NCBI RefSeq assembly: GCF_006345805.1
Contig: NC_042999.1
Coordinates: 139,500,001-139,564,000, forward strand
DNA from: Octopus sinensis
Lineage: Eukaryota
Reading direction: 5' to 3'
Length of the DNA: 64,000 bases
Below the pieces are notes generated by a model. It was not told where the DNA came from. It was given only the letters and a program-made list of their open reading frames with translations, and did not search any database. Made by a program: the position numbers and the translations under genes. Position 1 is the first letter of the stretch, and each line of letters opens with the position of its first letter. Below, piece by piece: positions 26,292 to 62,508 of this stretch.

Positions 26292-26518
26292 ATGTATGCA
26301 TGCATGTGTGTGTGTGCATGTATGCATGCATGTGTGTGTGTGTGTGTGCATGTATGCATGTGTGTGTGTGTGTGTGCATGTATGCATGCATGTGTGTGTG
26401 TGTGTGTGTGCATGTATGCATGCATGTGTGTGTGTGTGTGTGCATGTATGCATGCATGTGTGTGTGTGTGTGTGCATGTATGCATGTGTGTGTGTGTGTG
26501 TGTGTGCATGTATGCATG

Positions 26519-26559
<41 letters not shown>

Positions 26560-38048: not shown

Positions 38049-39017
38049 TCAAGTAAGTTCATCTGTTAAATCTATAGAGATATCATTAACTTGTGGTGAT
38101 AATGACACATTATTTCCTCTGGATGTAGAAGGACCAAAAGAACAGGCACTTTTTCTACTGATTACAGATTGACTGAAAGGTTTATAAAAATTTCTTCCAA
38201 TGAGACTGGGCTGAGAACACATTTTTTGAACAATACAAGATACAGGAGATAAATCATTGGCCAGAGAGCTTTCAGATGTATTGGATTTCATATTAGATTT
38301 TTGTACATTTGATGTTGCTCTACTATCTGTGGTGTCTGAAAATGGCACAGCAAATACTTTACTGGGTACAGCTGAAGAATCTGATGGCGATATATGGGAT
38401 ATCCGAGAGGTGCTTAAATTTCTTTTGGATAGATGTGATATATTATGATTTTGTTGACTATATATACTGTTTACAGGTTCCAGGGATTTAGTTTGTGCAC
38501 TGGGGACAACAACTAAACTAGTAGAAGAGTTTCTGTTTTTACCTACATCTAGTGAACTGACTTCAGACTTCCTTTCAATGGCAATGTTTGTATTTTCTTT
38601 ATGTTGTGTTAATTCAACTACAGAAATGTCATCTTTTATATTAATAATATCTTTAGTGTTAGTTGAAAGAGGTTTGGATGATGATGGCTGAATTGGTGTT
38701 ATAGTAATGTTTGATGATACAGATGCTTTAACTGGTATTTGGTGATATTGTGGATGATGTAATGTGGTTGCAAGTTGACTGTTACACAAATACTCAAATT
38801 CGCTCATATCTAATTGTTTTGCAATAATTTTTAACTGTTGTAAAATATCTGGATCAAGATCAAGAATCCCGTTGTATGCATATTCTGCAAAAGCAGTTAA
38901 AGCTTCTTTGCTAACTTCCTGTGGTAAGTTAATTTGGAGAAACTTGTGAGAAAGCATATCTGCACCAAACACTGACAGCAGTTTAGGACACACAGCAGCT
39001 AGGACAACTTTATGCAT
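38049..39017 (-). CDS. Gene B last coding exon: C-terminal half of BTB + tail
   Basis: tttttcag acceptor; MHKVVLAAVCPKLL...FAEYAYNGILDL...LDMSEFEYLC; ends ...DLTDELT*. Confidence 0.9.
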   Translation of the reverse strand: MHKVVLAAVCPKLLSVFGADMLSHKFLQINLPQEVSKEALTAFAEYAYNGILDLDPDILQQLKIIAKQLDMSEFEYLCNSQLATTLHHPQYHQIPVKASVSSNITITPIQPSSSKPLSTNTKDIINIKDDISVVELTQHKENTNIAIERKSEVSSLDVGKNRNSSTSLVVVPSAQTKSLEPVNSIYSQQNHNISHLSKRNLSTSRISHISPSDSSAVPSKVFAVPFSDTTDSRATSNVQKSNMKSNTSESSLANDLSPVSCIVQKMCSQPSLIGRNFYKPFSQSVISRKSACSFGPSTSRGNNVSLSPQVNDISIDLTDELT

Positions 39018-40124
39018 CTGAAAAATAAGCAAGAGAAAAAGAGAAACAGTAAAAAGAAAATTATAATATAATCTCAGTTTATGAGAAACTGCAACAATGA
39101 AAAGCATGAGGACTACATATACTATATTTTCAAGCATATAAGTTGAATCTTTCAGAGCAAAATTTGTAACTAAAAAAGGCACATCAACTAACACACCAAG
39201 ACAACACTGAAGAACCAAAATTTCCATGTGAAATGCAGCAAGTTTTAAAATGTTGAGCAATCATCAGCCATTTATAGAGGTTTTCCATCAATACATATAC
39301 TTATTTCCATCTCTATAAATGGCTGATGATTGCTCATCATTTTAAAGCTGATTTAATACTTACAATGTTTAATAAAATGATGTAGCGTGAAACGATCGTA
39401 CCAAATTACCGAAGATATTCTTGTTGCTTACTTTGATTATATATATAAATTATTAAAATTATAATTTAGGGTATCTACAAGATACTGCCATGCTGAAAAT
39501 AGCAGCCAGGAACTGACTCTAAGACCACTTTAAGAGAGAAGACAAAAAGACAAAATAAAACTAGAAAAAATTACTAGATAATTCCAGATCCCGGACCTCT
39601 GGCTTTGCATTTAGAAATGCTTTACCTCATCAGTGGAATATATGCAGAGAGAAACACAAATACATATATATATGTATATATATAAATACAACATACGAAT
39701 ACTTTGGCAACCGTGTCGGTGGCACGTAAAAGCACCATCCGTTCGCATCCGTTGCCAGCCTCGGCTGGCCCCCGTGCCGGTGACACGTAAAAGCACCGTC
39801 CGTTCGTGGCCGGTTGCCAGCTCTGTCTGCCCCGTTGTCGGTGGCACGTAAAAGCACCATCCGTTCGTGTCCGTTGCCAGCATCGCCTGGCCCCGAGCCG
39901 GTGACACGTAAAAGCACCATCGTTCGTGGCCGTTCACCAGCTGTCTGGCACCTGTGCAGGTGGCACGTAAAAAACACCCACTACACTCGCGGAGTGGTTG
40001 GCGTTAGGAAGGGATCCAGCCGTAGAAACACTGCCAGATCTGACTGGGCTAACGAAGCCTTCCAGCTTCACAGACCCCAGTTGACCCGTCCAACCCATGC
40101 TAGCATGGAAAACGGACGCTAAAC

Positions 40125-40168
<44 letters not shown>

Positions 40169-41967: not shown

Positions 41968-42009
<42 letters not shown>

Positions 42010-45000
42010 CTTTCAGTTTCCATCTTCCAAATCTACTCACAAGGCTTTGATTGGACCAAGGCTATAGCAGAAGACATTTAACCAAAGTGCCACAAATTTG
42101 GACTGAACCCAGAACCATGTATTTACAAAGCAAAGTTCTTAACATAGAGCCAAGCCTGCACATATGTTTGGAAATGAATTGTAGGGATGTATAACTTCAT
42201 GGTAATCTTAGTGCTAAGATTAGAGAATTTTGAAATAGAATTCCCATTTATTTCAAAGTCAACTAAGAGAAATTAACAAAATAATGTTCCTTACCTTAAA
42301 ACACAACACATAGGCGCTACAACATAGTTTGAATTTGTGGTCAGTAGTTCAGTAACATAAACTCATTATTTGGTAAAAGTTATTGTGCAATAAGTCTTCA
42401 ATTAAACTTACCATCACTGTAGATGTACCATTTCCAATACCAGCATCACATAATTTTCCACTCTTCCATAGCAATGCCAGACTGGACATTACATTTTTCT
42501 GATGATCAGCAAGAATAAATATTTTCTTTTCGTGAGGTTGTGGCATTTCAAAAGTCTTTGGTTGCATAACAGACGTCAGAACTGGAGGCATTGAGAAGTG
42601 AACCGACTGTGGTACAGTACCAACATCCTTAATCACACAAATAGGCTTCTCAGCAGCAATTTGAGAAGTAATTTCCTGACAATTTCCAGCCATTTTAGAA
42701 ACGTGGCTATCACCACTCATTTCCCTGAAATTTATTGAAATAAGAGCTATATAAATGATATTTCATAAAAAGACCTTGAAATGAGAGAAATACGTTTAGA
42801 GAAGCGTTTTCTTTGTGGACAATAAAGGAGTAAAAATTAGGATACTCTTTGAATTTCACTTTCATCATCATTTAATGTCTGCTTTCCATGATGGCATGGG
42901 TTGAACTTTTTGACTGGAGCTGATAAGGCCAGTGGGCATACCAGGCTCTTGTCTGTTCTGGCATAGTTTCTACAGCTGAATGCCCTTCCTAATGCCAAGT
43001 GTTCCACAGAGTGTACCAAGTACTTTTTATGAAGCAGCACCAGCACGAGTGCTTTTAACAAGGCTCTGAAAATAGCCCTTAAATATTTGAATAATTTCAA
43101 ACAAATTGATATATCAAATATTTTTATACATAGAATTCACAAAAATGGCTATACAAGGGTAGATTCATGTTGTTTAACCTCTAACCTACAAAATATTATT
43201 TTTATGACCATATTCAGATTATTATTTGTTGTATAACATTGAGTTGTTGTTTAACTCTAGGTCTACCCTAATTGAGAAGGCCTGTGATCAAAGATGTTCT
43301 ACTCGTGACTAACCATTCTTTTTTTTTTCTAAACACCATGTACTTAAAGCCATATTATCCAATGTATCCTTCCTTGTTTAGGACTGTGGTGTGATTTGAG
43401 AGAGATTTAGCAGAGAGTATTGATGTTCAATGGCCAAATGTTCCTTCTCAATAACAATGTAAGTGAGGAAGATGTTTTAAAATGTCCTAGAAACCAACAA
43501 TGGAACATCTGCAGTCATTCCACTTGTTCGAAATAACAGCCATATTGTCCTACAAAATAGCAAAATAAGTCCTTTTTCTAGACATATTACATGTTTGTTA
43601 CTCATGAGATTGTTCTGGTGAAGCTGCAAACCACTAAAATGCTACATGAAATAACTAAACCAATACTCTATACCTGGTGGTACATACTTTATCACATGTA
43701 ATTATAAATGCTAAAGCTAACTTAGTCAGAATCTAAGCCACAGAACTGATGGCTCTAAACTAGTCTAATTCAGGCAGCTTTAGTAGTTCAACTTAATTAC
43801 CTAATCAGAAAAAAACATACAAAAACAAAATTATAAACACAAACTGCAATAATACAATGACAGGTGATGCCATGCGTGAAGACTCAAGTACTATAAACTA
43901 CACAATGGCAAATAAATCATAAGCTAAATAGTTAATATGGAGTGAAATAACAATGCATTCTAGGCAAGAGGACACCCTGAGAAACCTGTGGATGCTAAAA
44001 ATAAATCTGTAGCGTTACCTGTCATGTATCTGAATATTGCTTGGTGCTATTGAAGGGAGATCATCTAGATTGATACATTTGACAGAAGAGATTGGTGGTG
44101 TCTTGTTAGGGAACTCTGATCTGTATTATAGATTATTTAAGCTTAACAATCTGGCTTGATCATCTCTAAATGATTGCCTGAAATTCATGTCAGAACTAAA
44201 ACCAACCAATTCTTCAAAACAAAATGGCAAACAATCAAAAATCTATCAATTCACCTGCCAACAGAGGTATTTCCTTGATAATATTGTTCTTTTTCTGGAT
44301 GTTTTTCAAATGTCCTGGCAGCAGTCAGTTTCTTTGGAATTTTGGTAGCTGGAATTGGACAGTGTGGCTCATCTGGAATGATAACTGGGTTAGAAGAGAC
44401 AGAAGGTGATTTTCTTTGATGTATTGATATATTCTTTTTTGCTTTATTCTGGTTCAATGATCTTGCCTGCAATCATAATTGGAGAATATTGTAAAATCAG
44501 CTTGATAATAATCATGTAAATATGCAGAATTAAATGTACCTTGAACATTTTCTTCTCTCAAATTATATAAAGCCTATATATATTCAATAAAATACAATAT
44601 TTCAGAAAATTATATACACACACGAGGGCCCAGGAGATGTGGCAATTTGCTGTACTTGATAAGACATGTCAAACTAAGTAAAATAGCTGTCTTCTACACA
44701 TACAGGCTTGTTCTTTCAAGTGTCAGTGCCACAGAAAAAGCACTCGTGCTGGTACTGCATAAACACAACCATGCCAGTGGCATATAAAAAGCACCCAGCA
44801 CATTCTTAAGTGGTTGGCATTAGGATGGGCATCCAGCCAGAGAAACCATGCCACAACAGACAATCAGAGCCTGAACACCTCCCAGCTAGCCAGCTCTGTG
44901 TCAAACCATCCAACCCATGCCAGCATGGAAAGCAAACATTAAACGATGTTGATGAAGATGATACACATACAGAGTGTATCAGATATTTGAGAACAAAATA

Positions 45001-48000
45001 TTTATTAGAATAAAAGCAGGTACACATAGCAAAAGGTTATTCATTAAAACCACCATCAGTCTCATTACAGCTTTAGAAACTAGATGTATTGATCAGATGA
45101 TCTTTATTCATGTTGGCCATAAAGTCCCTGACAGTAGACATCAACAAGTCTTTGGTGTTGTGAGCATGCTAGTTGGTTTCCTTCTCAAAAACACTCCAAA
45201 TGTAAGAGGCCAAATTTTAAGGATAACATTATCCACTCCTTCATGCAAGCTGTATGAGATGGAATAAAATCTTACTGGAACACATATAGCCTCCCCCAAG
45301 CAACTCTCTTGAATCCAGGCTTGACAACTATCTATACTGTCTCAATGTTGGTTGCTGCACTAACCCTAAAACCATGACGATAAAAAAATGTTGAGTTATG
45401 ACCCATGAACATCAGACTATGGAAATTTAGTGGGGATTTCAGTGAAGCTGGCACAGTGCCATCTGTCATGTCTCTTGTTCACTTTTTGATCTTAGACAAA
45501 AATCTCATCTAAGAAGAACCAAAGCATGTCAGGCTCCTCAGAATGCTTCAATTTGTTCAGCATTCGATCCTCCATCCCTCTTCTCATAACAGGATTTGTA
45601 TCTGATGTCTTCATGCACATATATCTAATTGTCAATTCTGAAACATGGTGATGACAGACAATGGCTCTCATTTGACTTGCCAGGTTTATCATTGATTATT
45701 CCTTGGATTTGCTGGACATTTTGACTTTCTTAACAATGTCTGACAGTCAATAACGTTTATTTTTGTTTTTTTCTTTTAGCTAAAGAAGGCACATTCCCAA
45801 CAGAGACTAAGAGCTTTTTCTGATCTTAAATATGAAGGACCTGGCAACATTTAAGAAGGTTGCAATCTTAAAACCACTGTAGCTGACAGCTAAGGTGATG
45901 AGAATGGCGTGCATTTTCATCATCTGTGTTAGCTTCCATAATGGGACAGGAAAAAGAGGATAGTTTGCTTAAGTTTGGGCCACTTATTGTTTTTAAAAGT
46001 TTGGTTCTCAAATAGCCAATACACCATGTGTGTGTGTGTGTGTGAGTGTGTGTGCGTGTGTGGATATACCTGCCACATACAACAGATTTCTCATAGTTTC
46101 CAAAGTGCAACACAGTAGAACTGAACATAAAATCATGTGGTGGGAAAAGCAGCTGAAGCTCAACAGTTTTTTCAAATTCTAAATGTATACTGTTATTCTA
46201 TGTACTAGATATTTAACTAGCAAATCCACCTCACCCACTTTCAAAGCTTTCATCTCTTAAATTTCCATATACCAAGAGAAACCTAACTGCAAACATACCC
46301 ACATAGTCACAGTACAAAGTAAGTTAATAACTGAAGGACATACCATCACTGCGTGCGAACTGTTGCCAGTACCAGAATTACATGATTTTCCATTCTTCCA
46401 TACTGAAACCTGATTGGACATTTTATGGACACCAAGAATAAATTCTTTGCAGGGGAGTTGAGGTTTTTCAACAGGTGCAGGCTGAGAAATTGGATTCTGA
46501 ACTGAAGATACTGAGAATTGAACTGTTTGAGCTATATTTTCTGCTTTCTCCATTTTAGGTTTAGAACCTGGGACTGAAGTTTGAGAAGGAAATTGTTGTG
46601 GCTTCTCAACATTATCTCTACCATCTGACTGCCTGAAATACATTGAAGTATAAAATTACAAAAGAACATAATTATTCAAATTGAAAAAAAAAATACAATG
46701 AAAAGCCATGACAAAAATAAGTTACCCATCATTGAAATCATTGTTTTTATGTTTCTTTATCAAATGATCTTCTATAGGTTTTGTTCGATCATCAGTAACA
46801 GGAGGCAACAGATGTGAGTCACTTGAAGTAGGCACTGTGACAGATATGGGTTGTTTTCTTTTTCTAGTAACTCTATATTTTGAATTATGTTGATTCAATG
46901 CTGCAATCTGCAACATGAATGGGAAAAAAATCAATAGAATAGCATTAAAGGAAAGATATGTAATTGCTTTTGTGTAGGCATAGGTCAATTTCATAAGGAA
47001 TTGATTGAGGCAACTAACTGGATTAGAACTCTGAAAATAAATAACAATGAATACATGAGACTATGAATGTGTGGTGGGGGAGGGGGGTGAAGGTACATGG
47101 CTTAGTGGTTAGGGCATTCAGCTCATGATCATAAGGTCAATTCCCAGCGACGCATTGTGTCCTTGAACAAGACATTTTATTTCACGTTGCTCCAGTCCAC
47201 TCAGCTGGCAAAAATGAGTAGTACCTGTATTTGAAAGGGCCAGCCTTGTCACACTCTGTGTCAAGCTGAATCTCCCTGAGAATTATGTTAAGGGTACACA
47301 TGTCTGTGGAGTGGTCAAGTCACTTGCACATTAATTTCACGAGCAAGCTGTTCCATTGATCGTATCAGCTAGGACCATCATCATTGCAAACAACAGAGTG
47401 CTCCTCTCTTTCTCTGTGCGTGCATACTATAATGGAGAAAGCTGCTTATTAATTAGGCATGTAACAATTACTAAAAGTACTAAAAGAAAGCAATATCAAA
47501 AGCTTAACCGTCTAGAAATATTTTTATAAATTCATGTTCTAAGAAATTGCCTATATGTGTGTATGTAGGTACAAAATAATATTGCATAATAGAAATTTAT
47601 ACAGAGTCAAAGAGTCATCAACTGAGCAGAGTACATCAAAACTGAAGTAGCATAGTGGGCAGAAACAACAGGACTTAAGATTATTGTTCCTTTGTGTTGG
47701 TCAAATATAGTGCCAGTGAGTGCCATAAGTTTGTGTGCCATTTTGAAATTCTTATTAACTGTCTTCTGCATATGCTGTGAATGAGATGTTAAATCCTAAT
47801 ATTTTTGTCTTTTGGGTGACTGATCTGTTTGGGTGTGATGACTGGTTGTAAATGATGTTTTCTAGTGTTGCTGGTAAAAAGGGAAATGGTGGATTTAATA
47901 AGTGCTACTCTAGGACCTTTGTTTTGGAGTCAGTTTTCTCAGTAGTTAATGTAGAGTTGAAAAAGATGTACAACAGTTTGAAAATTGGTGGGAAGATGCA

Positions 48001-54000: not shown

Positions 54001-55379
54001 ACCTTCGCCAACTGTTCAACCAGTCCGCCACCCTAAATAAGCTGTACAGTATTCCAGGGTACATGTCTCCATTAGACGAGTTTAAGATGTACCTTGTGAG
54101 GTCCATGTAAGCCTGGTTACTATGTAAATGTGTATGTTAATTAGTCAAAAGATTTCCATCGGTCTCACAATTCTATCTACTAGACCTAAATCCTTGGATC
54201 GACCCGAGTTGTGGAACACCTGCTCCAAATGAACATGCAGATCGAAGTGGAATGAAGCTCGTTTTGAAAGTTGTTATAAGACCAATTTCATAAACTATTC
54301 GATCATAAATGCAACCAAGAAATCCTACACATTAATAAACACGAAAATGAAATTTTTTCAAAAGCAAATGCAGAACGAATGAAACCGCATTTGTGTGTTC
54401 CAGATGTTCTTTCTTACACTACACCGAGCCGCATATGTTTGCTCAGAAACAAATACTTGCTTCACTAAGTTCCCGCTGTACTAAGAAGCTTATCGTTCGT
54501 GTATCCGTATATGATTTATAATTCGTCCAACGTCAGTCAAGAAGCGATATAACGAAAGAGAATAACAGGAACATGAAGTCGAATATTATTAATGAGGAAA
54601 CAGGATAGAGTGACGTTGCAACTAATTAACAGAGCATAAGTGACAAAACTTATATGAAGACAATAAATGAATAACAATGTAGACAATAATAACCATTTCT
54701 TATGTAAACAAAGCGATTCTTTTTTAAAATTCAGCAGAATCAATATTAATATATTATTAGGGTTACATTTTATTTCGAAGTTGTCCGAAGACTAAAAAGT
54801 AGTCAAATTTAGCGCGATTTGAATAAGTACATAAAATTATGAAACTAAATATTCCAAGGATTAGTTTAGCACTCTACTTCAATCACAACAAAACCAACAT
54901 ATACTCACATCTTCAATTTCTTCTTTCGACAATTTACATCGTCGAATTTTGGAGCGCGAAAATCCCACCAACGGTTTGTGATTGTGTTGTAAGTTGGATC
55001 TGGTTATCCTTAGTAATCCTTTAGCACTGGATAGCGAGAGGAAAGACTTACATCCGACCGGCTTGCAATGCATCTTAAGTCGCTTTGTGTTTGAATTACC
55101 TTTCGGTTCTCCATGTTGAGTACACACAAACGTCACGGAGACGTATCGGAGTGCCCGAGATCGAGTTTTGTCTCGGTACTTGTTATGGTCATTAGCATTA
55201 CACGATGATTTAATACGGTATATGTATCCAGTTCTGTTCATGAACTGGTGCAATAGCTCCGAGAAGGAGTCAAAGGAGTCAAAAGCGGTCTGAATGAAAA
55301 CATCTCCGAATATTTTTGACACATCAATCAACATTTCGCATATAAGTTTGGAGTTTACTTTCTCCTCATGCGCGCGCAT
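38049..55379 (-). CDS. BTB/POZ gene B: putative FAR1/ZSWIM3_N-like N-terminus + duplicated half-BTB cassette + BTB + S/T-rich tail (up to about 811 aa)
   Basis: Exons 54909-55379, 46726-46907, 46344-46632, 44255-44466, 42412-42724 and 38049-39017 are all in frame with GT-AG sites. The tail is homologous to gene A (PFSDTT.S.AT...DLSPVS). Linking the 55-kb exon to the rest is inferred from phase and context. Confidence 0.68.
39241..39349. other. Near-perfect hairpin, 39-bp stem, 31-nt loop
   Basis: Arms 39241-39279 and 39311-39349 give 37/39 Watson-Crick pairs. Confidence 0.9.
39703..40165 (+). repeat. RTE 3'-tail copy with about 59-bp tandem units
   Basis: About 4-5 units containing GGTGGCACGTAAAAGCACC followed by the common LINE tail and (GAT)n. 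Other tail-only copies at about 19540-19710, 22240-22400, 27140-27350, 42860-43050, 44730-44960 and 50285-50460. Confidence 0.8.
40241..41790 (-). mobile_element. RTE-like LINE 3' portion with internally duplicated 3' UTR
   Basis: Same family as 51030-52350 on the opposite strand (MLRWMSNVSVHTRQS..RRLRWYGHVARM); about 170-bp units repeated at 40500-40920; (ATC)n tail at 40241. Confidence 0.85.
42412..42724 (-). CDS. Gene B cassette 2 exon with intact N-terminal BTB half
   Basis: atttcag / GTAAGT; ends IFILADHQKNVMSSLALLWKSGKLCDAGIGNGTSTVM. Confidence 0.88.
44255..44466 (-). CDS. Gene B linker exon, cassette 2
   Basis: attgcag / GTGAAT; ARSLNQNKAKK...QGNTSVG(R); phase 0 to 2; resembles the cassette 1 linker (LNQ...RKxP). 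Confidence 0.72.
44970..46028 (-). mobile_element. Decayed mariner-like (maT/DD37D-type) element
   Basis: Degenerate TIRs (CAGAGTGTATCAGATATTTGAGAAC / GTTCTCAAATAGCCAATACACCATG); remnants LNKLKHSEEPDMLWFFLDE and HAHNTKDLL...MANMNKDHLI. Confidence 0.7.
46344..46632 (-). CDS. Gene B cassette 1 exon with degenerate N-terminal BTB half
   Basis: atttcag / GTATGT; ends KEFILGVHKMSNQVSVWKNGKSCNSGTGNSSHAVM. Confidence 0.72.
46726..46907 (-). CDS. Gene B linker exon, cassette 1
   Basis: gttgcag / GTAACT; IAALNQHNSKYRVTRKRKQP...NDFND(G); phase 0 to 2. Confidence 0.72.
49938..51025 (+). mobile_element. hAT (Charlie/SPIN-like) transposon 5' fragment, interrupted
   Basis: CTCTAGAG (NTCTAGAN target) then CAGGGGTCTCCAAC end; decayed transposase start MVSEKKRKISDENRIFEERWEDRYF...CLIC...KASYVVS...SFTEGKFVK at about 50617-51020. 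Confidence 0.75.
50031..50268. mobile_element. 238-bp MITE inserted in (TA)n
   Basis: Imperfect TIRs CAGGCCTGTAGCC / GGCTATAGGCTTG, TA on both sides. Confidence 0.55.
51030..52350 (+). mobile_element. RTE-like LINE 3' portion (decayed)
   Basis: LLYADDL; CSICRKGVG...HKR...CGRC; YLSDQV; LLHSSETWA; WYGHV; GRPRKTW; 3' UTR tail ending in (GAT)n. Confidence 0.85.
53790..54130 (-). mobile_element. Possible Tx1/L1-clade ORF2 3' fragment
   Basis: IKMGLERRTLPPRFEKRWKDV resembles the Tx1-like C-terminus; short and decayed. Confidence 0.4.
54909..55379 (-). CDS. FAR1/ZSWIM3_N-like (WRKY-GCM1/MULE-type) DNA-binding domain exon
   Basis: Open 157 codons: FDSFDSFSELL...YVSVTFVCTQHG...KPVGCKSFLSL...LRITRSNLQHNH (C..C..HxH pattern), then donor GAT|GTGAGT in phase 0. 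Confidence 0.65.
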
Positions 55380-55922: not shown

Positions 55923-57990
55923 TCAGCACCTTGAATTGAAAAGTTGGGGGCGCTGGGAAACCTCTTTAATGGCTATTGCAGCGTTGCCATAGGTGATTGC
56001 GAGGCTGATGCGCTGGAACAGCCAAGGACCCTCACAAGCCTCACCAGTTACTTCTGCAAGGCAAGTTGCCAGTGAAAACAGAAATCTCGCAGTTAGTGGT
56101 CCGACACCAACAAAAGTCTCGAATGCCACAGGATGGAAAATGTAGTTGGCCGACAGATCGCTGTATTTCAGGATTTTGTTCCGCTCAGCCACAGAAGCTG
56201 TGGATCTCACCCTGACCACAGCACCCAGGATGTGAGAAGCAAAGGAGTTGTTAACTGTAACATCCCCGACAAGGGCACAGGGTGAGGCCATCAGGTCTAT
56301 TTCCATCACATCTGGACAATCCAGATGGTTCCAAGATTAAGGGGATGTTTGCCCAGGCCAAGCTCTGCTTGAGTATCAGGTTTAACTCCGTATGACACAC
56401 AAAGCAACCAGCATTCAGGCAGCAAGAAAGGCCATGAAGGCCTGCAGAATTGAGAAGCCTGCCACAATGACAGATTAAACCCGTGCATACGTCAGCTCCC
56501 ACTCTGAGGGCAATTGAGACACAAGGTACGTCCAAGCTGAGCAGGCCACCAATATTAGCCACATGGATGGCATCAATCCAGACACCTCTGACAGTCCTTC
56601 TCCAGAGCAGACAAGCCCAATTCCCTCCAGTGTTGGAGAACTTCATCCAGTTCCCTGTTGAAACTGGTCCATGTTGGAGAGGACAAGATATTGCTCACCA
56701 GGGTGGAGGAAAGGAAGCAGGGGAGAGAGAGGGACAAACACTTATGAAGACCAAGACCTCCAAATGCAGCCTGATCGCATGACGTTGGAGAAAGTTTGAC
56801 ATTGATTAAGCATTCGAGTCTCTCAAAGATTAGGTTGTCGAAGCATTGGAGGCACAATGGGAATCGGTAAGATGAACTGACTCTGAATAAATATAGAAAG
56901 CTTAGGGATTGAGAAGTAATTCCTAAGTATGAAAAAATATTGATGGGATTCGATAGCTTCAATATTTTTCAGCAATTGCTCAAGGGCAGCCACCTTCAGC
57001 TGGAAGATTGACTCAAAGGCAAGGTCAGTGATTGGAATTCCTAGGAAGCACCAAGCCGATGGGGCAGGGCCTGCAATGGAAGGGAAGGACTCTGCAAAAA
57101 GGTCAATAGTTGATTGATGGTGAGAAGCCAGGTGGATGAGGATCCAGAACTAACATTTGGAGCTGTTTACTTGGAGACCCCGGTGACCAAGCTCCCTAAC
57201 TATCATATCTGCAATGGTGAGAACACTGTCCAGAGGTCCCCACAAACAAGTATCGTCGAGATAGCAGACGTTGAGGTCTAGCTCAACCCCCATCTTGGTA
57301 ATGTCATCAATGCCCAGAGGTAACAGAGCGGGCCCAAGTGGGACTCCTGAAGCGGAGGTGATGATTTGGTCACTGAGAGATAGGAGGGCTCCCGATAAAT
57401 CTGCCATGCAAGGCAGTAGAGTTGTGGGACCTTCACTTTTACTGAGCTGAGGACAGCATCGCAGTGGATGGAGATGACCTTGGGTAACAAGAACAAGTTG
57501 GCATAGGCTCTGGTAGTGTAGGCAGCAGCTTCACATCCCAATTTGGTGCCCAATCCTAGCTGGGTGGGGTAAAATTCTTCCTCCAATAAGCTAGAGATTG
57601 ATTGTAAGCACACCTTTGCATTGAGACAGCGAAGGCTGCAGCTGACTACAATGGGGCGCAGGTCTCCATTGGGTTTAGTGAGCACGAATAATTTTGCACC
57701 AATGAATAGTGGGCAGATATAAAGGAAGACGTTCACTGAAGAGAACTGATTCACAAACTGAGTCAAATTTTCCAAGAGCTCAAGTCTGGCATCACCGGCC
57801 AATAAGAAGATACCATCCTTGAGGTGTTAAGGTCGAAGGCCATCAATTCGCGCACCTGAACCAGTAGGGAAGGATGAAATCGCCTTTCTGATGTTATCAG
57901 ACATGAAGACCAGTCTCGAGTATTCTGGAGGGTTGGGCCAGTTTAGGTGATTATCAGTGGGTGCTGGTGTGTGCTTCTTTCACACGTCTA
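55923..57990 (-). mobile_element. CRE-clade non-LTR retrotransposon, decayed
   Basis: RT remnants (KPNGDLRPIVV, QLGLG...GCE, PLGP, YLDD), C-x-C...H...C zinc knuckle, REL motifs RPDGLT...DVT and FHPVAFETF...FQRISLAI..GNA; frameshifted. Confidence 0.8.
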
Positions 57991-58154
57991 AGAGACTGAA
58001 AAATTTTTTAACAAATACTCACAAGACAGAAAACTCTTCTGTATTTTTCATTGGAAAATAAAACAAGGCATGTATTTCAAAAATTATTTATTACAAAACT
58101 AAAGCTCAATTTATCAGTGTGTATGTGTGTGTAAACTGAAAACTATTTCTGATA

Positions 58155-59204
58155 TCAAGTAAAACCATCTGTTTTATATAAACCTGTATTTTTGACATTG
58201 GTAACTTGTGTTGATGATAATGGTAATCTGTCCCCTTCTGCTGTAAAAAGTCCTACAGGATAGACATCATCATTGCTACCATAATTCACACTGTTGTCAA
58301 TTGACTGAGTTGCTACAGTGCGAGTTAACGGTTTAGAAGAGTCTTCTCTTATGAGTCTAGATTCAGAACACAGTTTTTCTTCACTATATGACACAGGAGA
58401 TAAGTCAGAAACTGGAGAACTTTCAAATACATTAGATTTTAATTTGGGTGATGTTCCATATATCTTATTTGCTGTTGCTTTGCTATTTGTGGTATCTGAA
58501 AACGGTAAGCTAAAATCTGTAGTGGATACAGCTATAGAATTCAAAGGAGTGTTTAGTGCCTGAGAATTATCTGAAACTGAACCAGATGTGTAAGCTCTTT
58601 TATTCATTTGACCATATTCGTCATCATCAGGTCCTACAGGCTCGATTTTTACAGTGGGAAGAATAAGAGAACCAACTGGAGGGTTGCCACCGTTAGTGTC
58701 CAGGGATGAAGCCTGAGACTCTTGCTTAAAGGTTCTAAGTGTATCTTCTTTAAGTTCTGCTAATTCATTTTGAGAAATCTCCTGCTTAATATCCTCTGTA
58801 TGGACAGCTGAAACAAATTTGGTTGATATTGGAGTAGGAAATGAAGAAGATGTCTGAATCATTGCATCTGTTTTGCTTATTGTATTGGACACAAAAGATG
58901 GCATCTGCCTGGTATCATCAAACGCAGTGACTGTTGAAGCAAGTTGCTGACGTGCTCCACTTTGAAGATGAGCATCACACAGATTTTGTAAATCTTTCAT
59001 GTCTAATCGTTTTGCAATGACTTTTAGCTGTTGTAAAATATTAAGATCAAGATCTAATAGTCCAGTATATATGTATTCAACAAAAGCCATTAAAGTTTCT
59101 GTGCTTACTTCAGGAAATTTTACTTCAAAAACCTCAGAAGAGATGTGTGTACTAAATATTGAGAACAGTTTTGGAGACACAGCAGACAAGACTATTTTAT
59201 GGAC
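58155..59204 (-). CDS. Gene A last coding exon: C-terminal half of BTB + tail
   Basis: atttcag acceptor; VHKIVLSAVSPK...; SUMO-consensus-like IKQE and VKIE; ends ...KTDGFT*. Confidence 0.9.
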   Translation of the reverse strand, partial: VHKIVLSAVSPKLFSIFSTHISSEVFEVKFPEVSTETLMAFVEYIYTGLLDLDLNILQQLKVIAKRLDMKDLQNLCDAHLQSGARQQLASTVTAFDDTRQMPSFVSNTISKTDAMIQTSSSFPTPISTKFVSAVHTEDIKQEISQNELAELKEDTLRTFKQESQASSLDTNGGNPPVGSLILPTVKIEPVGPDDDEYGQMNKRAYTSGSVSDNSQALNTPLNSIAVSTTDFSLPFSDTTNSKATANKIYGTSPKLKSNVFESSPVSDLSPVSYSEEKLCSESRLIREDSSKPLTRTVATQSIDNSVNYGSNDDVYPVGLFTAEGDRLPLSSTQVTNVKNTGLYKTDGFT

Positions 59205-62200
59205 CTGAAATATAATAAATGATAATAGTATGTTTATAGCTTGCCAACAATAGAATGACAGACACTTAAGAAATATGTTAATAAAGTAGAAAAATGTAGG
59301 CTTATGTTTTTCTGACTTTTTCAAAAGCTAATGACTCCTAAAAATCTCAAGCCACTGGAAGTCAATTTAAACGTCTTTTATTTGGAAGGGTTATTTCATT
59401 AATACCTTAATAAAATGAACTTGATTTTCTTTTTCTGTAAAATATTCTATTCTATATTAGTAAACAAATGTTTCGGTAAAAGTTATTTTCAAAGACTGAG
59501 TCATAAAATTTTCAGATAATAATAAAACCTAAAAAGTAATAAGTTCTATAACTTCTGATAACGGCACAAAAGATTTTTAATTATAAAGCAACAGATTTAT
59601 CTAAGAATTGCACCAGTAAGAACATACAAATCAACTACACCTACATTTCAGAAATATAGTGGGGAGTAGAAAGAATAGTTTGATATTAAGCCCATTAGAA
59701 ATTAAGCATAATTTTTTAGACTTAAAAGCAACATTTTTTAGTTATCATGATGATGACATTAGAAACAGTGGATCTTTTCCCTTTGAACGGCAGATTTAGA
59801 AAATATTTTTTTGCAACTAAACACTTTCAAACTTCGGTCACTGGTAGAATATGTCATATAAAACATCTTTTACTCTTAGTGTTGTTGAGAAATTTTCTAT
59901 TTTCAAAGTTATTTTGTGTTCAAGTAGTCGTATTTCAGTAATTTCAACCAATCAATGACGTATATTCAGCTGAATAAAATTACTGCCATTGCTTGTCAAC
60001 AACAACTATCGGCGGTGTATATTTCGTTTGTCACTGTTATTTATGACATCATTCGTGCATTTGTACTGGTTTTAGCTTTAAGGTTTTAGGGTTAGGGTAG
60101 GGTTTTAGAGTTAGAATTAGGGTTTGGGGTTAGGGTTGGAGTTACAGAAAAAAGTGAAAAATGAAGAAATTGGAGGGGGAGGCGGCAAAAAAGTCTTGTG
60201 GTGGTGCCATGAAGTAAACATGCTTCAGATACACTTGTTTATTCATACAAACGTAACTGAGATGAAATATGTCATAAATAACAGTGACAAACGAAATATA
60301 CACCACCGATAGTTGTTGACAAACGACAGCAGTAATTGTTGAAATTACCAAAATACGACAACTTTAACATGAAATAACATTGAAAATACAAACTTTTCTC
60401 AACAACACTAAAAGATGTTTTATATGACACATTCTACTAGTGTCCAAAGTTTGAAAGTGTTTAGTTACAAAAAATTAAATTCTCGATCTGCTGTTCAAAG
60501 GGTAAAGATCTGAAACAGTTTATAATGTGAAAAAGTTTACAACTGTATACTTACCATCACAGTAGATGAGCCATTGCTAATACTGGCATCACATAATTTT
60601 CTACTTCTCCACATAGATGCTAGGTTAGATATGACACAATGTTGATGACTAGTAACTAGCAATTTTCGTTTCAGTAAATCTTTTTTCCTAATTATTGATT
60701 TAGATACAGTTGTTTGATTTGGATCTTTCACCAGCTTTGATTTGGATGGAGTTATTTGAAATGGTGAAGTCAACACCTGAGCTGGCTTTGTAATATTTTG
60801 CGATGCTTGTGATAAACTTGAATCTTGCTGGACTGGCATTTTAGTAGTTAGATGTACACATTTTGAAGTCTTTGGAGATGATAAAGCACTGTCCATTTGC
60901 CTAAAATGAAAATTTGCAATTAATTCAGAAGAAATATATATAAGAGAAAAACAATAACTCAACAGCATTGTCAAAATACCATTTTAGTCATCACATACCA
61001 TATGTCATGTGATTGTTGATTTCTTAACTTTTGATTCTGCAGGTGTTGCTTCCCAAGGTGCTGTGTTTTATTCTTTTTTTCCTGTGTCATTTTTATCTGA
61101 GTGTTGAGGAAGTGAGGCACGATCAAAGAAAGAAATAAAAAGATAAAAGACTAATGAATTCATTTAAATGGAAATAATTGAGACTGTGATGAATTAATAA
61201 GTTATTTTAATGAAAATGTCAATGATAGCTAAAAATTCTTGTTTGTAAGGCTGACAAATAATGCTTAATTTCCACATTGAAACTTCCACTGAGGAAAAAT
61301 GGAATCTGTCAGCCAAATCCTCAAAAGCATTCAAAATCATCCTGAACAGAGAATCATCATCATCATCATCATTTAACATCCGCTTTCCATGCTAGCATGG
61401 GTTGAACGAATCTCTACAGAATTCCCAAACTTGAATGAGAATGGAGCTGCATGTTATACATATCCTATTCTGAAATCTGACATGATGGTAGATTGTTATA
61501 ATTTGACTTCAACATCAAATATATAGTAACTGCTGCCACAATTCACACAGACGTTCTCTGGTAGATTTTTTGCAGAAAATTTTTCAACATTGTAATTCCT
61601 GATTGAACTTACAATTTACAATTGATCTGACAGCAGCTTCATTAAATTTGTATTTTTATCATATACATTGATTCCAAAGTTATACTCAATTTATAATGGA
61701 TAGTGATCCCTCAACACTGTATAGTGTACATGATACTGTATTACAGGTGTGTATTTCTGTGTTGATGATAATATTAGATAATGAAATACTGAGCATGCTA
61801 AGTTACTTGGCTTGCCCACTGATGTTTATCAATTGCACATCTCCTAACCCTGACATGGAGATTCAAGGAAGGATACAAAGTATGACTGAGTCTTAATTCA
61901 CGATTTTGTTTTCTTAATCAAAATTGTGGACAGGCTGCAGTACTAAAAGTTGACATCACAAGAGACTTCATATCATAAACCTTCTTAATACATTTATCCT
62001 ACATATATCCTTGGTCTCTATAATTAATTGCAATATCAATGATCTCACAAATAAATTCTATAAGCTGATCTTTGTTATATTTCTCCTATTGGTGTGTGAT
62101 GCTTAAAAATGTATACCTGATATCTACCTTGAGACTTGTACGATAAGTATTTGTCCTCTGTTTCTGAGCTTCCAATCTTGCCTGTCTTTGTTCTGGTGTT

Positions 62201-62508
62201 TCTGCCCGCCGTCTAGCAAGCTCTCTTTGCCTATGATTTCGTAATCTTAATTGCCTTTCTTCTGCAGTTTCATTTTTCCGTCTTTCCTTTACCCTCATAG
62301 CATTCCTATAAGCATTTGTCTTCTGTTTCCGATCTTCTAATCTTGCTTGTCTTTGTTCTGGTGTTTCTGCCCGCCGTCTAGCAATCTGACTTTGCCTATG
62401 ATTTCGTAATCTTAACTGCCTTTCTTCTGTAGTTTCATTTTTCCGTCTTTCCTTTGCCTTCATAGCACTCCTGGTGAGACGACCCAGTGCTGATACTTTG
62501 GGAGGCAT
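58155..62508 (-). CDS. BTB/POZ gene A: STPR-like repeat N-terminus + central BTB + S/T-rich tail (about 624 aa)
   Basis: Exons 62128-62508, 60999-61096, 60555-60900 and 58155-59204 join in frame (phases 0,2,0) with GT-AG sites. The BTB is split as ...LASMWRSRKLCDASISNGSSTVM|VHKIVLSAVSPKLF...FVEYIYTGLLDL...LDMKDLQNLC. Stop TGA at 58155-58157. Confidence 0.82.
59771..60510. mobile_element. Foldback/MITE-like element with degenerate (TTAGGG)n centre
   Basis: Inverted arms 59771-60049 and 60269-60510 align with indels; centre 60080-60140 reads GGTTTTAGGGTTAGGGTAGGG...TTAGGGTT. Confidence 0.75.
60555..60900 (-). CDS. Gene A exon with N-terminal half of BTB
   Basis: ttttag / GTAAGT; ends HQHCVISNLASMWRSRKLCDASISNGSSTVM. 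Confidence 0.88.
60999..61096 (-). CDS. Gene A linker exon
   Basis: Long pyrimidine tract + ctcag acceptor, GTATGT donor, phase 0 to 2; IKMTQEKKNK...QQSHDI(W); not in the ORF track. Confidence 0.7.
62128..62508 (-). CDS. Gene A first coding exon, STPR-like repeats
   Basis: Acceptor ttttctag at 62521, ATG at 62508, donor AAG|GTAGAT. Contains the 23-aa unit ETTEERQLRLRNHRQSQIARRRA and ETPEQRQARLE repeats. Confidence 0.75.

What the first reader, a model, noticed from the sequence alone, without database searches (positions are those of the whole stretch)
38049..62508. Tandem BTB paralogs that appear to have captured different transposon-type DNA-binding modules (STPR-like vs FAR1/MULE-like)
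Seen: two adjacent minus-strand genes share one architecture: first coding exon ending in phase 0, linker exon (phase 0 to 2), linker + N-half BTB (2 to 0), then C-half BTB + S/T-rich tail. Their BTB intron sits at the same position (STVM|xHK), their tails are homologous (PFSDTT...DLSPVS), and they stop at the equivalent place (ACTTGAT). Their first coding exons are unrelated: gene A has STPR-like ETxEERxxRL repeats, gene B a FAR1/ZSWIM3_N-like C..C..HxH domain. Established: STPR and FAR1/WRKY-GCM1 folds bind DNA, FAR1-type domains come from Mutator transposases, and classical BTB transcription factors have an N-terminal BTB with C-terminal zinc fingers. Inference: a modular system in which a BTB scaffold is re-targeted by exon capture of transposon DNA-binding domains, inverted relative to ZBTB or mod(mdg4)-type proteins. 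I do not recognise either domain combination as described.
Basis: partly seen in the sequence, partly recalled or inferred. Interest (0 to 1): 0.85.

Follow-up and report, generated by a model that had tools for sequence, protein, structure and literature searches.

The report
Octopus BTB genes with transposon heads
Two neighbouring Octopus sinensis genes, already in RefSeq but uncharacterised, each join a transposon-type DNA-binding first exon (Helitron-type STPR, or Mutator-type FAR1/ZSWIM3_N) to a shared BTB dimerisation module; they end a 12-gene array that also holds a locus with variable first exons spread over about 180 kb, built like an inside-out fly mod(mdg4)/lola gene.

Summary

Gene A has four STPR repeats, a linker, a split BTB and an S/T-rich tail. 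Gene B has a ZSWIM3_N/FAR1 domain, a duplicated linker plus half-BTB cassette, a BTB and a tail.

Gene B's six-exon structure and all its intron phases are conserved in Argonauta. Its FAR1-like exon is under purifying selection (dN/dS 0.26, p=2.5e-4) and keeps the C..C..HxH ligands. Gene A's STPR exon has dN/dS near 1, but the STPR signature positions do not vary.

The modular reading holds beyond the window. The two genes close a 12-gene tandem array. One member, LOC115209932, splices first exons encoding THAP, FLYWCH, CENPB-type HTH and Crypton-type DUF3504 domains onto constant BTB exons. These exons lie up to about 180 kb upstream, and all seven first exons I checked across the array end in phase 0. 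In this genome STPR sits just upstream of Helitron Rep domains.

One 2023 paper noted Octopus THAP and CENPB proteins carrying BTB. I found no description of the locus architecture or of these two domain combinations. DNA binding and the splice junctions were not tested with reads.

The parts
62128..62508 (-). Gene A (RefSeq 'transcription factor Ken-like' X1) coding exon 1. It holds the start codon and four 23-residue STPR repeats arranged 2+2 with a 9-residue spacer, and ends in phase 0.
   Evidence: Pfam STPRs 31 bits against a cut-off of 27. Sequence and donor AAG|GTAGAT. The positions that the BmSTPR paper calls conserved (E1, T/S2, R9) never vary across 12 repeats, with T/S at position 2.
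62143..62472 (-). A 165-bp tandem duplication (55 codons) inside gene A exon 1. It doubles the STPR repeats from 2 to 4 and is absent from the O. bimaculoides orthologous exon.
   Evidence: TRF: period 165, 2.0 copies, 91% matches, no indels. The O. bimaculoides exon has a single unit.
60999..61096 (-). Gene A linker exon, phase 0 to 2.
   Evidence: Splice sites read. The assembled CDS is in frame and identical to XP_029634340.1.
60555..60900 (-). Gene A exon 3: linker plus the N-terminal half of the BTB (beta1, alpha1 and the first strands). Phase 2 to 0, ending ...SSTVM|gtaagt.
   Evidence: Whole paralogous proteins match the Pfam BTB profile from about position 2-4 to 106-109 of 110, spanning this exon and the next.
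58155..59204 (-). Gene A exon 4: C-terminal half of the BTB, an S/T-rich tail with the conserved motifs PFSDTT, KLKSNVFESS and DLSPVS, and the stop codon.
   Evidence: Pfam BTB 47.8 bits. 100% match to RefSeq P0001 residues 221-569.
54909..55379 (-). Gene B (LOC115209895) coding exon 1: start codon and a ZSWIM3_N/FAR1-type (WRKY-GCM1 class) domain. It ends in phase 0 at GAT|GTGAGT.
   Evidence: Pfam ZSWIM3_N 41.2 bits against a cut-off of 27.8. C86, C110 and H132-x-H134 are invariant in Octopus and Argonauta, and the same cysteines and HNH align in the MULE-linked relative P0071. dN/dS 0.26 against O. bimaculoides, p=2.5e-4. There is no in-frame AG acceptor between the upstream stop and the ATG.
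46726..46907 (-). Gene B linker exon e2, phase 0 to 2.
   Evidence: 98.9% nucleotide identity to O. bimaculoides.
46344..46632 (-). Gene B exon e3a: a degenerate duplicate of the linker plus N-half-BTB exon. Phase 2 to 0, predicted disordered.
   Evidence: e2+e3a aligns to l2+e3b over their full length (BLASTP E=6e-12, 28% identity). dN/dS 0.76. pLDDT is below 35 in the model of the orthologue.
44255..44466 (-). Gene B second linker exon l2, phase 0 to 2. It has no start codon of its own.
   Evidence: 97.6% nucleotide identity to O. bimaculoides, with intron substitution divergence of 5-11%.
42412..42724 (-). Gene B exon e3b: linker plus the functional N-terminal half of the BTB. Phase 2 to 0, ending ...TSTVM|gtaagt.
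   Evidence: In the model, beta1 and alpha1 of the BTB fall here with pLDDT of roughly 65-90.
38049..39017 (-). Gene B exon 4: C-terminal half of the BTB, tail and stop codon. An AATAAA follows within about 25 bases.
   Evidence: Pfam BTB 24 bits against a cut-off of 20.5. Sequence. 40% identity to gene A exon 4, E=2.9e-40.
55923..57826 (-). Overlapping ORFs, with a YLDD-like motif suggestive of a retroelement, fill most of the 2.8-kb gap between gene A's stop and gene B's start codon. Not classified.
   Evidence: ORFs listed. No Pfam hit at E<=0.01. GC rises to 0.48 here.
51080..51379 (+). Reverse-transcriptase fragment inside gene B intron 1 (transposon debris).
   Evidence: Pfam RVT_1 35.2 bits.

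Best explanation
The region holds the last two members of an octopod-specific tandem array of BTB genes. Each protein is built N to C as follows: a DNA-binding module encoded by one self-contained first exon, a disordered linker, a canonical long-form (ZBTB/KLHL-like) dimerising BTB split by a conserved phase-0 intron, and a disordered S/T-rich tail with short conserved motifs.

Gene A's head is a four-repeat STPR domain. Gene B's head is a MULE-derived ZSWIM3_N/FAR1 zinc module.

Shown here: the exon structure, the domain identities, the family and its array, conservation of gene B's structure back to Argonauta, purifying selection on the FAR1-like exon, and phase-0 ends on every first exon examined.

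Inferred: the heads were acquired from transposons (MULE, Helitron, P-element/THAP, pogo/Tc5, Crypton, FLYWCH-bearing elements). They were inserted or duplicated upstream of a BTB unit and spliced in through the universal phase-0 junction. The proteins then act as dimeric sequence-specific chromatin or transcription regulators. The first exon sets the target, which may include the cognate transposon ends. The BTB and tail set the output (self-association and partner recruitment).

This gives an N-terminal-variable, C-terminal-constant mirror image of Drosophila mod(mdg4)/lola.
For: Identity of the models:
- The window is G000:C3:139500001-139564000, and C3 has the length of the chromosome that carries the RefSeq models.
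- Both models are exact RefSeq proteins.

Domains:
- STPRs, ZSWIM3_N and BTB all score above the Pfam cut-offs.
- The BTB fold is confident (pLDDT about 65-95 over residues 450-577 of the O. bimaculoides orthologue) and includes an N-terminal beta1 strand.
- Foldseek TM 0.75-0.81 to KEAP1, NS1-BP, Miz-1, PLZF, LRF, BCL6 and ZBTB8A. The sequence search gave the same set.

Gene B:
- Orthologues with ZSWIM3_N plus BTB exist in O. bimaculoides (92% identity, 811 aa) and Argonauta hians (40% identity, 766 aa).
- The Argonauta gene has the same six exons, the same phases and all GT-AG junctions.
- dN/dS by exon: 0.26 for exon 1 (p=2.5e-4), 0.26-0.42 for the other exons, 0.76 for the degenerate e3a.
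- The zinc ligands are invariant.
- A relative joins the same domain to a MULE/ZSWIM1-3 RNaseH-like core.

The array:
- 12 last-exon copies lie on the minus strand at C3:139.538-139.742 Mb. There are further clusters at C3:141.88-141.98 Mb and copies on C2, C14, C16, C23 and C24.
- Variable heads in paralogs: THAP, FLYWCH, CENPB/Tc5 HTH, DUF3504/QRICH1 and STPR.
- First exons of LOC115209932 map from about 3 kb to about 180 kb upstream of its constant exons.
- All seven first exons checked have an ATG and a phase-0 GT donor.

Transposon links:
- The CENPB-type exon has dozens of decayed dispersed copies.
- STPR lies about 1.1-1.8 kb upstream of Helitron_like_N at 11 or more loci. Two pairs appear to share one open frame.
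- HLE1 Helitrons carry STPRs (PMC11417382).
- STPR binds the DNA major groove (PMC4856987).

Transcript evidence for the architecture: an intronless 1788-nt Logan contig (SRR27666080) encodes an N-terminal region I read as HTH-like (no Pfam match to it) plus a BTB, 539 aa.
Against: - I could not inspect any RNA reads or cDNA for the junctions 54909>46907, 46344>44466 or 62128>61096. Support rests on RefSeq models and evolutionary conservation.
- An older O. bimaculoides annotation splits gene B into a FAR1-only model (P0068) and a BTB-only model (P0067).
- Gene A's STPR exon has dN/dS of about 1.0-1.2 against its O. bimaculoides counterpart and 0.7-1.1 among paralogs, so relaxed constraint is not excluded.
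- The structure model of the FAR1-like exon is of low confidence (mean pLDDT 50).
- No close MULE copy of the exon survives in the genome. The only other match is one relic inside the array, so the donor element is unidentified.
- DNA binding, dimerisation and regulatory output are untested.
- The BTB resembles CUL3-adaptor BTBs as closely as it resembles ZBTB ones.
Confidence: 0.7

Rival explanations
1. Gene B is really two genes, and the 811-aa model is an annotation chain. One gene would be a MULE-derived FAR1-only gene (exon 1, e2, e3a and a private terminal exon). The other would be a BTB-only gene starting near 44 kb.
For: The 2015-type O. bimaculoides models P0068 (348 aa) and P0067 (483 aa) split the locus in exactly this way. 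e3a evolves almost neutrally (dN/dS 0.76). Intron 1 is 8 kb long and carries transposon debris. No reads were available.
Against: - The private exons of the split models are not conserved. The P0067 head has an in-frame stop in O. sinensis. The P0068 tail has a 6-residue gap and only 71% identity.
- Exon l2 has no start codon, yet it is 97.6% identical between species and is in frame only with an upstream phase-0 donor.
- The six-exon structure with the same phases is kept in Argonauta at 40% protein identity.
- NCBI models in O. sinensis, O. bimaculoides and A. hians, and an O. vulgaris annotation record, all join the parts.
Confidence: 0.12
2. Gene A's STPR-like exon is a decaying or merely basic low-complexity leader. 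Gene A would then be effectively a BTB-only protein, and its Pfam hit marginal.
For: dN/dS is about 1.0-1.2 against O. bimaculoides and 0.7-1.1 among paralogs. The Pfam score is only 4 bits above the cut-off. Several paralogous heads fall below the cut-off.
Against: - The open frame, start codon and donor are intact in all four O. sinensis paralogs and in O. bimaculoides.
- The period is exactly 23 residues. Positions 1, 7, 9 and 10 are identical in all 12 repeats (E, Q, R, L), and position 2 is T or S.
- Substitutions concentrate in repeat positions 11-23. Columns that vary: 20 of 26 there against 6 of 20 in positions 1-10 (Fisher p=0.0025).
- This pattern fits change of specificity, not random decay.
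- A recent in-frame duplication doubled the repeats without any indel.
Confidence: 0.15
3. The proteins are CUL3 ubiquitin-ligase substrate adaptors, or chromatin-tethered ligase adaptors, rather than transcription factors. The transposon-derived head would serve as the substrate- or locus-recognition module.
For: The best structural and sequence neighbours of the BTB include the CUL3 adaptors KEAP1, NS1-BP/IVNS1ABP, KLHL3 and SPOP, alongside ZBTB proteins.
Against: No BACK, Kelch or MATH domain follows the BTB. The region after the BTB is predicted disordered. Every head identified is of a DNA-binding type. The 3-box region was not examined specifically.
Confidence: 0.12

Closest known systems
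Drosophila mod(mdg4) and lola (BTB loci with many alternative DNA-binding exons)
   Same: One locus produces many isoforms that share a BTB and differ in a cassette-encoded DNA-binding module, including FLYWCH (PMC11426971). The octopus LOC115209932 does the same with FLYWCH, THAP, CENPB-type HTH and DUF3504.
   Different: - The orientation is inverted. The octopus variable part is the N-terminal first exon, so choice is probably by alternative promoter or first exon. The fly variable part is a 3' exon set, joined partly by trans-splicing.
- The octopus BTB is a generic long-form BTB. TTK-type BTBs are reported as arthropod-only (PMC11426971).
- The octopus heads come from several transposon superfamilies.
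- The two window genes each have one annotated head.
Vertebrate ZBTB/BCL6/PLZF and Drosophila Ken (BTB zinc-finger factors)
   Same: The BTB fold has the N-terminal beta1/alpha1 extension, with TM 0.75-0.8 to PLZF, BCL6, LRF and Miz-1. RefSeq named gene A 'Ken-like' on this basis.
   Different: In the octopus proteins the BTB is central or C-terminal, not N-terminal. No C2H2 fingers were detected. The DNA-binding module is N-terminal and of transposon type.
Host-transposase fusion genes (KRAB or SCAN plus a transposase DNA-binding domain; Cosby et al. 2021, cited from my own knowledge) and F-box/BTB captures of transposon domains (PMC12062965)
   Same: A host effector or oligomerisation domain is joined by splicing to a transposase-derived DNA-binding domain that has lost its catalytic core. 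Gene B's head is under purifying selection.
   Different: A different host domain and lineage. Here a whole tandem family re-uses one junction phase with at least six kinds of head. The BTB fusions named in PMC12062965 are the vertebrate ZBTB11 integrase-type ones.
Octopus THAP/CENPB 'TE-derived transcription factors' of Mukherjee & Moroz 2023 (PMC10027918)
   Same: Very probably the same gene family. That paper states that most Octopus CENPB and THAP factors are associated with BTB/POZ, and it lists one Octopus FHY3-type factor.
   Different: - That paper treats BTB/POZ as the transposon-derived part.
- It does not describe the tandem array, the alternative first exons or the phase rule.
- It does not describe the STPR-BTB combination, or say in the passages I read that the FHY3-type factor carries a BTB.
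ZSWIM3/ZSWIM1 and plant FAR1/FHY3 (MULE-derived factors)
   Same: The same N-terminal C..C..HxH domain family (Pfam ZSWIM3_N above cut-off, FAR1 below cut-off).
   Different: Gene B keeps only the DNA-binding domain. It has no MULE/RNaseH-like core and no SWIM finger, and it is fused to a BTB.
Bombyx FMBP-1 / human ZNF821 (STPR proteins) and HLE1 Helitron STPR modules
   Same: 23-residue repeats with E1, T/S2 and R9, and with R6 (K in two repeats) and L10 at the DNA-contact positions. In this genome STPR lies N-terminal to Helitron Rep.
   Different: The octopus paralogs have only two repeats. Gene A has 2+2 repeats with a spacer, against four contiguous repeats in FMBP-1. Contact position 16 is not Tyr. 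The domain is fused to a BTB.
Clustered protocadherin / UGT1A loci (variable first exons plus constant exons)
   Same: LOC115209932 shows the same genomic logic: many self-contained first exons, each with its own ATG, spread over about 180 kb and joined to shared downstream exons.
   Different: The protein class is unrelated. Promoter choice was not examined. The two genes in the window are duplicated whole units, not exons of one variable locus.

Membership tests
BTB/POZ domain proteins (PF00651) | Pfam BTB match above the gathering score, covering the whole profile | tested here: met
   47.8 bits (A exon 4) and 24 bits (B exon 4) against a cut-off of 20.5. Whole paralogs score 41-52 bits over profile positions from about 2-4 to 106-109 of 110.
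BTB/POZ domain proteins (PF00651) | BTB fold | tested here: met
   AF2 model of the gene B orthologue: pLDDT about 65-95 over residues 450-577. Foldseek probability 1.0 and TM 0.75-0.81 to solved BTB domains.
ZBTB-type transcription factors | BTB at the N-terminus followed by C-terminal C2H2 zinc fingers | tested here: not met
   The BTB starts near residue 235 of 624 (A) and 450 of 811 (B). No zf-C2H2 hit in any exon or paralog scanned.
mod(mdg4)/lola-type loci | Constant 5' BTB exons joined to alternative 3' DNA-binding exons; TTK-type BTB | tested here: not met
   The variable exons are 5' and the BTB exons are 3' and constant. I did not test the TTK motif; it is reported absent from Mollusca (PMC11426971).
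ZSWIM3_N / FAR1 (WRKY-GCM1 class) DNA-binding domain | Profile match above the gathering score | tested here: met
   ZSWIM3_N 41.2 bits against 27.8. FAR1 22.2 bits against 28.1, which is below cut-off.
ZSWIM3_N / FAR1 (WRKY-GCM1 class) DNA-binding domain | Conserved C..C..HxH zinc ligands | tested here: met
   C86, C110, H132 and H134 are invariant in O. sinensis, O. bimaculoides and Argonauta, and the same cysteines and HNH align in the MULE-linked P0071.
ZSWIM3_N / FAR1 (WRKY-GCM1 class) DNA-binding domain | Four-stranded sheet fold and DNA binding | tested here: inconclusive
   The AF2 model has a helix and four strands in the expected order, but mean pLDDT is 50 with only three sequences. 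No PDB relative by sequence. DNA binding is not testable here.
Autonomous MULE transposon | MULE/RNaseH-like catalytic core (and SWIM finger) next to the N-terminal domain | tested here: not met
   Neither the exon nor the 811-aa protein has a MULE, ZSWIM1-3_RNaseH-like or SWIM hit. The exon is single-copy apart from one relic in the array.
STPR DNA-binding domain (PF21107) | Profile match above the gathering score | tested here: met
   31 bits against 27, two stretches. This is a narrow margin.
STPR DNA-binding domain (PF21107) | Tandem 23-residue repeats with conserved Glu1, Thr/Ser2 and Arg9 (PMC4856987) | tested here: met
   All 12 repeats from A, its paralogs and O. bimaculoides have E1, T/S2, R9 and L10, and R or K at position 6 (criteria).
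Host-transposase fusion genes | Transposon-derived DNA-binding domain spliced to host exons and kept by purifying selection | tested here: met
   Met for gene B (dN/dS 0.26, p=2.5e-4; structure conserved in Argonauta). For gene A the selection test shows no constraint (dN/dS about 1), although the signature positions are conserved.
Variable-first-exon loci (Pcdh/UGT1A-like organisation) | Several first exons, each with an ATG and a compatible donor, joined alternatively to shared downstream exons | tested here: met
   Met for the array member LOC115209932, from RefSeq isoforms and genomic mapping. Not shown for the two window genes, which have one annotated head each. The junction reads themselves were not seen.

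The most novel reading that the evidence does not exclude
Octopods may have evolved an inside-out mod(mdg4)/lola system. Dozens of transposon-derived DNA-binding first exons all end in phase 0 and are spread through tandem BTB arrays. They could be spliced combinatorially onto BTB scaffolds, even across paralog boundaries, as the duplicated cassette in gene B and in LOC115209901 hints. The result would be a fast-evolving repertoire of dimeric regulators that recognise the ends of the very transposon families they came from. That would be a cephalopod counterpart of the KRAB-zinc-finger surveillance of transposons, or a source of neural regulatory diversity.
Probability: 0.25. Interest if true: 0.8.

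Novelty: new variant of a known kind. Interest (0 to 1): 0.6.

Why it matters
BTB factors with exchangeable DNA-binding cassettes have so far been treated mainly as an arthropod speciality (mod(mdg4), lola). Large-scale capture of transposase DNA-binding domains has been worked out mainly in vertebrates.

This octopus family combines the two ideas in mirror-image form. One dimerising scaffold takes at least six transposon-type heads. A single splice-phase rule makes the heads interchangeable. The heads turn over quickly: there is a relic exon, a species-specific repeat doubling, and a dN/dS near 1 on STPR.

The family gives a concrete, testable case of how transposons supply new regulatory proteins in a lineage known for large genomes, heavy transposon load and a complex nervous system. 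The genes are already in public annotation, so testing needs only existing RNA-seq data and standard binding assays.

Tried and rejected
- Word-indexed homologue search restricted to the FAR1-like head found only the orthologue cluster. The exhaustive HMMER search was needed to reach relatives.
- PDB sequence search with the head found nothing meaningful.
- AF2 on the head with three sequences gave mean pLDDT 50, so I ran no fold search on it.
- The full-length model is confident only for the BTB.
I therefore placed the distant first exons by coordinates only.
- Exact look-ups of the O. sinensis proteins for transcript contigs returned nothing, so I obtained no read-level junction evidence.
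- I could not identify the organism behind the Logan transcript SRR27666080.
- I considered the split-gene model for B (P0067/P0068) and rejected it, because its private exons are not conserved.
- I considered RefSeq isoform X2 of gene A (P0001) as evidence of splicing between paralogs and rejected it. Its first 27 residues come from the paralog exon at C3:139,592,4xx-5xx, and there is no GT donor at the switch point, so it looks like a chimeric model.
- I rejected the idea that the heads are free transposon remnants. For B: purifying selection, a conserved structure and no catalytic core. For A: an intact frame in all copies.
- Literature searches for a description of the array or its first-exon system found only PMC10027918 and a passing mention in PMC11426971.

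Full report
**1. What is in the window**

All features are on the minus strand between 38,049 and 62,508.

Gene A coding exons:
- 62508-62128, ends in phase 0.
- 61096-60999, phase 0 to 2.
- 60900-60555, phase 2 to 0.
- 59204-58155, including the stop.
- All junctions are GT-AG and the product is 624 aa.

Gene B coding exons:
- 55379-54909, ends in phase 0.
- 46907-46726, phase 0 to 2.
- 46632-46344, phase 2 to 0.
- 44466-44255, phase 0 to 2.
- 42724-42412, phase 2 to 0.
- 39017-38049, including the stop.
- The product is 811 aa.

The prose of the finding simplified gene B, which has a duplicated linker plus half-BTB cassette. e2+e3a aligns with l2+e3b over their whole length (E=6e-12).

Pfam places three domains:
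- STPRs in A exon 1, 31 bits against a cut-off of 27.
- ZSWIM3_N in B exon 1, 41.2 bits against 27.8. FAR1 scores 22 bits, below its cut-off.
- BTB in both last exons.

The BTB intron (STVM|VHK and STVM|MHK), the PFSDTT and DLSPVS tail motifs and the ACTTGAT stops are as described. The last exons are 40% identical (E=2.9e-40). The first exons are unrelated.

**2. Identity**

The window is Octopus sinensis chromosome C3:139,500,001-139,564,000. Both hand-built proteins are letter-for-letter RefSeq models:
- XP_029634340.1, "transcription factor Ken-like isoform X1".
- XP_029634338.2, "uncharacterized protein LOC115209895".

**3. Is the FAR1-like exon really part of the BTB gene?**

I could obtain no reads. 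The evolutionary evidence is strong.

- O. bimaculoides has an 811-aa orthologue (92% identity). Argonauta hians has a 766-aa one (40% identity). Both have ZSWIM3_N plus BTB.
- I rebuilt the Argonauta gene from its locus. It has the same six exons, the same phases (0-0, 0-2, 2-0, 0-2, 2-0, 0-) and all GT-AG junctions.
- dN/dS against O. bimaculoides: 0.26 for exon 1 (15.5 synonymous against 15.5 replacement changes, p=2.5e-4 for synonymous excess), 0.26-0.42 for the other exons, and 0.76 for the degenerate duplicate e3a. Intron substitution divergence is 5-11%.
- The C..C..HxH ligands are invariant.
- An older annotation splits the locus (P0068 and P0067). Its private exons are not conserved: one has a stop in O. 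sinensis, the other a deletion.
- Exon l2 has no start codon and is conserved, so it needs an upstream phase-0 exon.
- No AG acceptor lies between the upstream stop and the ATG of exon 1, so it is a true first coding exon.

**4. The STPR exon**

Gene A's head has four exact 23-residue repeats, arranged 2+2 with a 9-residue spacer. The arrangement was produced by a 165-bp in-frame tandem duplication (91% identity). The O. bimaculoides orthologous exon lacks this duplication.

dN/dS is about 1.0-1.2 against O. bimaculoides and 0.7-1.1 among paralogs. Classical constraint is therefore not shown.

Two observations argue against random decay:
- Every copy keeps its frame, ATG and donor.
- Positions 1, 7, 9 and 10 of the repeat are identical in all 12 repeats, and position 2 is T or S. 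Change concentrates in positions 11-23 (Fisher p=0.0025). The BmSTPR-DNA structures define E1, T/S2 and R9 as conserved and R6, R9, L10, Y16 and R20 as contacts (PMC4856987).

I read this as a conserved scaffold with changing specificity positions. Relaxed selection remains a rival.

**5. Transposon origin of the heads**

FAR1/ZSWIM3_N:
- The exhaustive search found 51 relatives.
- One relative, P0071, couples the domain to a ZSWIM1-3 RNaseH-like/MULE core.
- In the O. sinensis genome the exon is unique apart from a frameshifted relic inside the array at C3:139,633,047-139,633,219.
- The capture is therefore old, and the donor element is gone or too diverged to detect.

STPR:
- The genome has at least 63 profile matches.
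- At least 11 of them lie about 1.1-1.8 kb upstream of a Helitron_like_N match on the same strand. Two pairs appear to share one open frame, of 1018 aa and 640 aa.
- This agrees with the report that HLE1 Helitrons stably carry STPRs (PMC11417382).
Direct descent of gene A's head from a Helitron is not shown.

**6. The wider system**

The two genes are the downstream end of a tandem array. Twelve last-exon copies lie on the minus strand at C3:139.538-139.742 Mb. A second cluster lies at C3:141.88-141.98 Mb, where STPR matches sit between the BTB exons. Further copies are on C2, C14, C16, C23 and C24.

I mapped 264 kb of the array with the annotated proteins. Heads in the family include:
- STPR in several genes.
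- THAP plus STPR in O. bimaculoides LOC106877737.
- FLYWCH in LOC115209904.
- Many heads in LOC115209932 and its orthologue LOC106877732, which have many RefSeq isoforms: CENPB/Tc5-type HTH, THAP, FLYWCH, DUF3504/QRICH1 (Crypton-type, from my own knowledge) and others without a Pfam name.

The constant exons of LOC115209932 lie at 139.7407-139.7428 Mb. Its first exons map at about 139.744, 139.745-139.746, 139.752, 139.753, 139.758, 139.787, 139.800, 139.911, 139.920 and 139.922 Mb.

All seven first exons I inspected have an ATG and a phase-0 GT donor. The linker plus half-BTB cassette is symmetrical (0 to 0). This explains how it can be duplicated in frame, as in gene B and in LOC115209901 isoform X2.

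The CENPB-type exon has dozens of decayed dispersed copies.

An intronless Logan contig from an unidentified organism encodes an N-terminal region I read as HTH-like, plus a BTB (539 aa, 56% identity to the octopus constant exon). Pfam matched only its BTB. The contig shows the architecture at transcript level.

**7. The BTB and the rest of the protein**

In the model of the gene B orthologue only the BTB is confident (residues about 450-577, pLDDT about 65-95). It has an N-terminal beta1 strand and alpha1 helix encoded by exon e3b.

The linkers, the degenerate e3a copy and the whole tail are predicted disordered.

Structural neighbours are KEAP1, NS1-BP, Miz-1, PLZF, BACH1, LRF, BCL6 and ZBTB8A/9, with TM about 0.75-0.81 (sequence search). 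This is the dimer-forming long-form BTB, not a special type. There is no BACK, Kelch, MATH or C2H2 domain.

**8. Mechanism**

Best-supported reading: these are dimeric nuclear regulators in which the first exon sets DNA target choice and the BTB plus tail provide self-association and partner recruitment.

- Shown: anatomy, family, conservation and the splice-phase rule.
- Inferred: DNA binding, regulatory output, acquisition of heads from transposons by insertion or duplication upstream of a BTB unit, and a possible role against the cognate transposons.

Rivals are a split gene B (0.12), a decaying STPR leader in gene A (0.15) and a CUL3-adaptor role (0.12).

**9. Comparison with what is known, and novelty**

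The closest functional analogues are mod(mdg4)/lola, but with inverted polarity and a non-TTK BTB (PMC11426971). Host-transposase fusion genes are also close (my own knowledge; PMC12062965).

Mukherjee & Moroz 2023 (PMC10027918) recorded that most Octopus CENPB and THAP factors carry BTB/POZ, and listed one Octopus FHY3-type factor. They took the BTB to be the transposon part and did not describe the locus organisation.

Searches for any description of the array, the first-exon system, or the STPR-BTB and ZSWIM3_N-BTB combinations found nothing else.

I rate this a new variant of a known kind. It is interesting for evolutionary genomics, already visible in public annotation, and not yet tested functionally.

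Noticed in passing
window 62143-62472 (-): A 165-bp in-frame tandem duplication inside gene A exon 1 (91% identity between copies). It doubles the STPR repeats from 2 to 4. The orthologous O. bimaculoides exon (L001:1270-1488) has a single unit.
   Followed up: yes
L004:8432-8521 (C3:139,592,432-521) and window 62254-62307: RefSeq isoform X2 of gene A (XP_036357294.1) takes its first 27 residues from the STPR exon of a paralog 30 kb upstream. It then switches into gene A exon 1 inside a shared CAGAAGAAA stretch, where there is no GT donor. It looks like a chimeric model rather than a real splice.
   Followed up: partly
C3:139,633,047-139,633,219 (L008, minus strand): A frameshifted relic of the FAR1/ZSWIM3_N exon with a stop codon (about 63-67% identity over residues 18-82). 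It lies between two STPR-type paralogs, which shows that head exons are duplicated and lost within the array.
   Followed up: partly
window 55923-57826 (-): Overlapping ORFs with a YLDD-like motif and raised GC fill most of the 2.8-kb gap between gene A's stop and gene B's start codon. They gave no Pfam hit. Gene B's promoter must lie in or beside this insert.
   Followed up: partly
window 6872-10891 (+): A decayed LTR-retrotransposon-like stretch: a gag-like DUF7041, protease- and RT-like motifs (read by eye in the ORFs) and an integrase fragment, in several shifted frames. GC is 0.45-0.51.
   Followed up: partly
window 13591-14184 (-): A mariner-type transposase fragment (Pfam Transposase_1, 85.7 bits).
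   Followed up: partly
window 39711-39972 and 40520-40955; 51080-51379 (+): Tandem repeats of period 61 (4.4 copies) and period 155 (2.8 copies) lie in gene B's last intron. A reverse-transcriptase fragment (RVT_1) lies in its first intron.
   Followed up: no
window 26033-26608: A long (CA/TG)n-type microsatellite, seen as His/Thr- and Cys/Val-rich pseudo-ORFs on both strands.
   Followed up: no
window 38052-38080 (-), C-terminus of gene B: Gene B ends ...ISIDLTDELT. From memory, this resembles a SUMO-interaction motif (hydrophobic core IDLT followed by acidic residues). Most paralogs end ...GLYKTDGLT instead. Not tested.
   Followed up: no
L001:2965-4473 and other N runs: In the O. bimaculoides assembly an N gap removes the middle of the gene A orthologue (the end of exon 3 and most of exon 4). 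The called 189-aa product there is therefore an assembly artefact, not a truncated gene.
   Followed up: yes
G000 C3:168886853-168888661, C23:19823168-19824919 and at least 9 other loci: STPR profile matches sit about 1.1-1.8 kb upstream of Helitron_like_N matches on the same strand. Two pairs appear to share one long open frame. STPR seems to be the N-terminal module of Helitron Rep proteins in this genome.
   Followed up: partly
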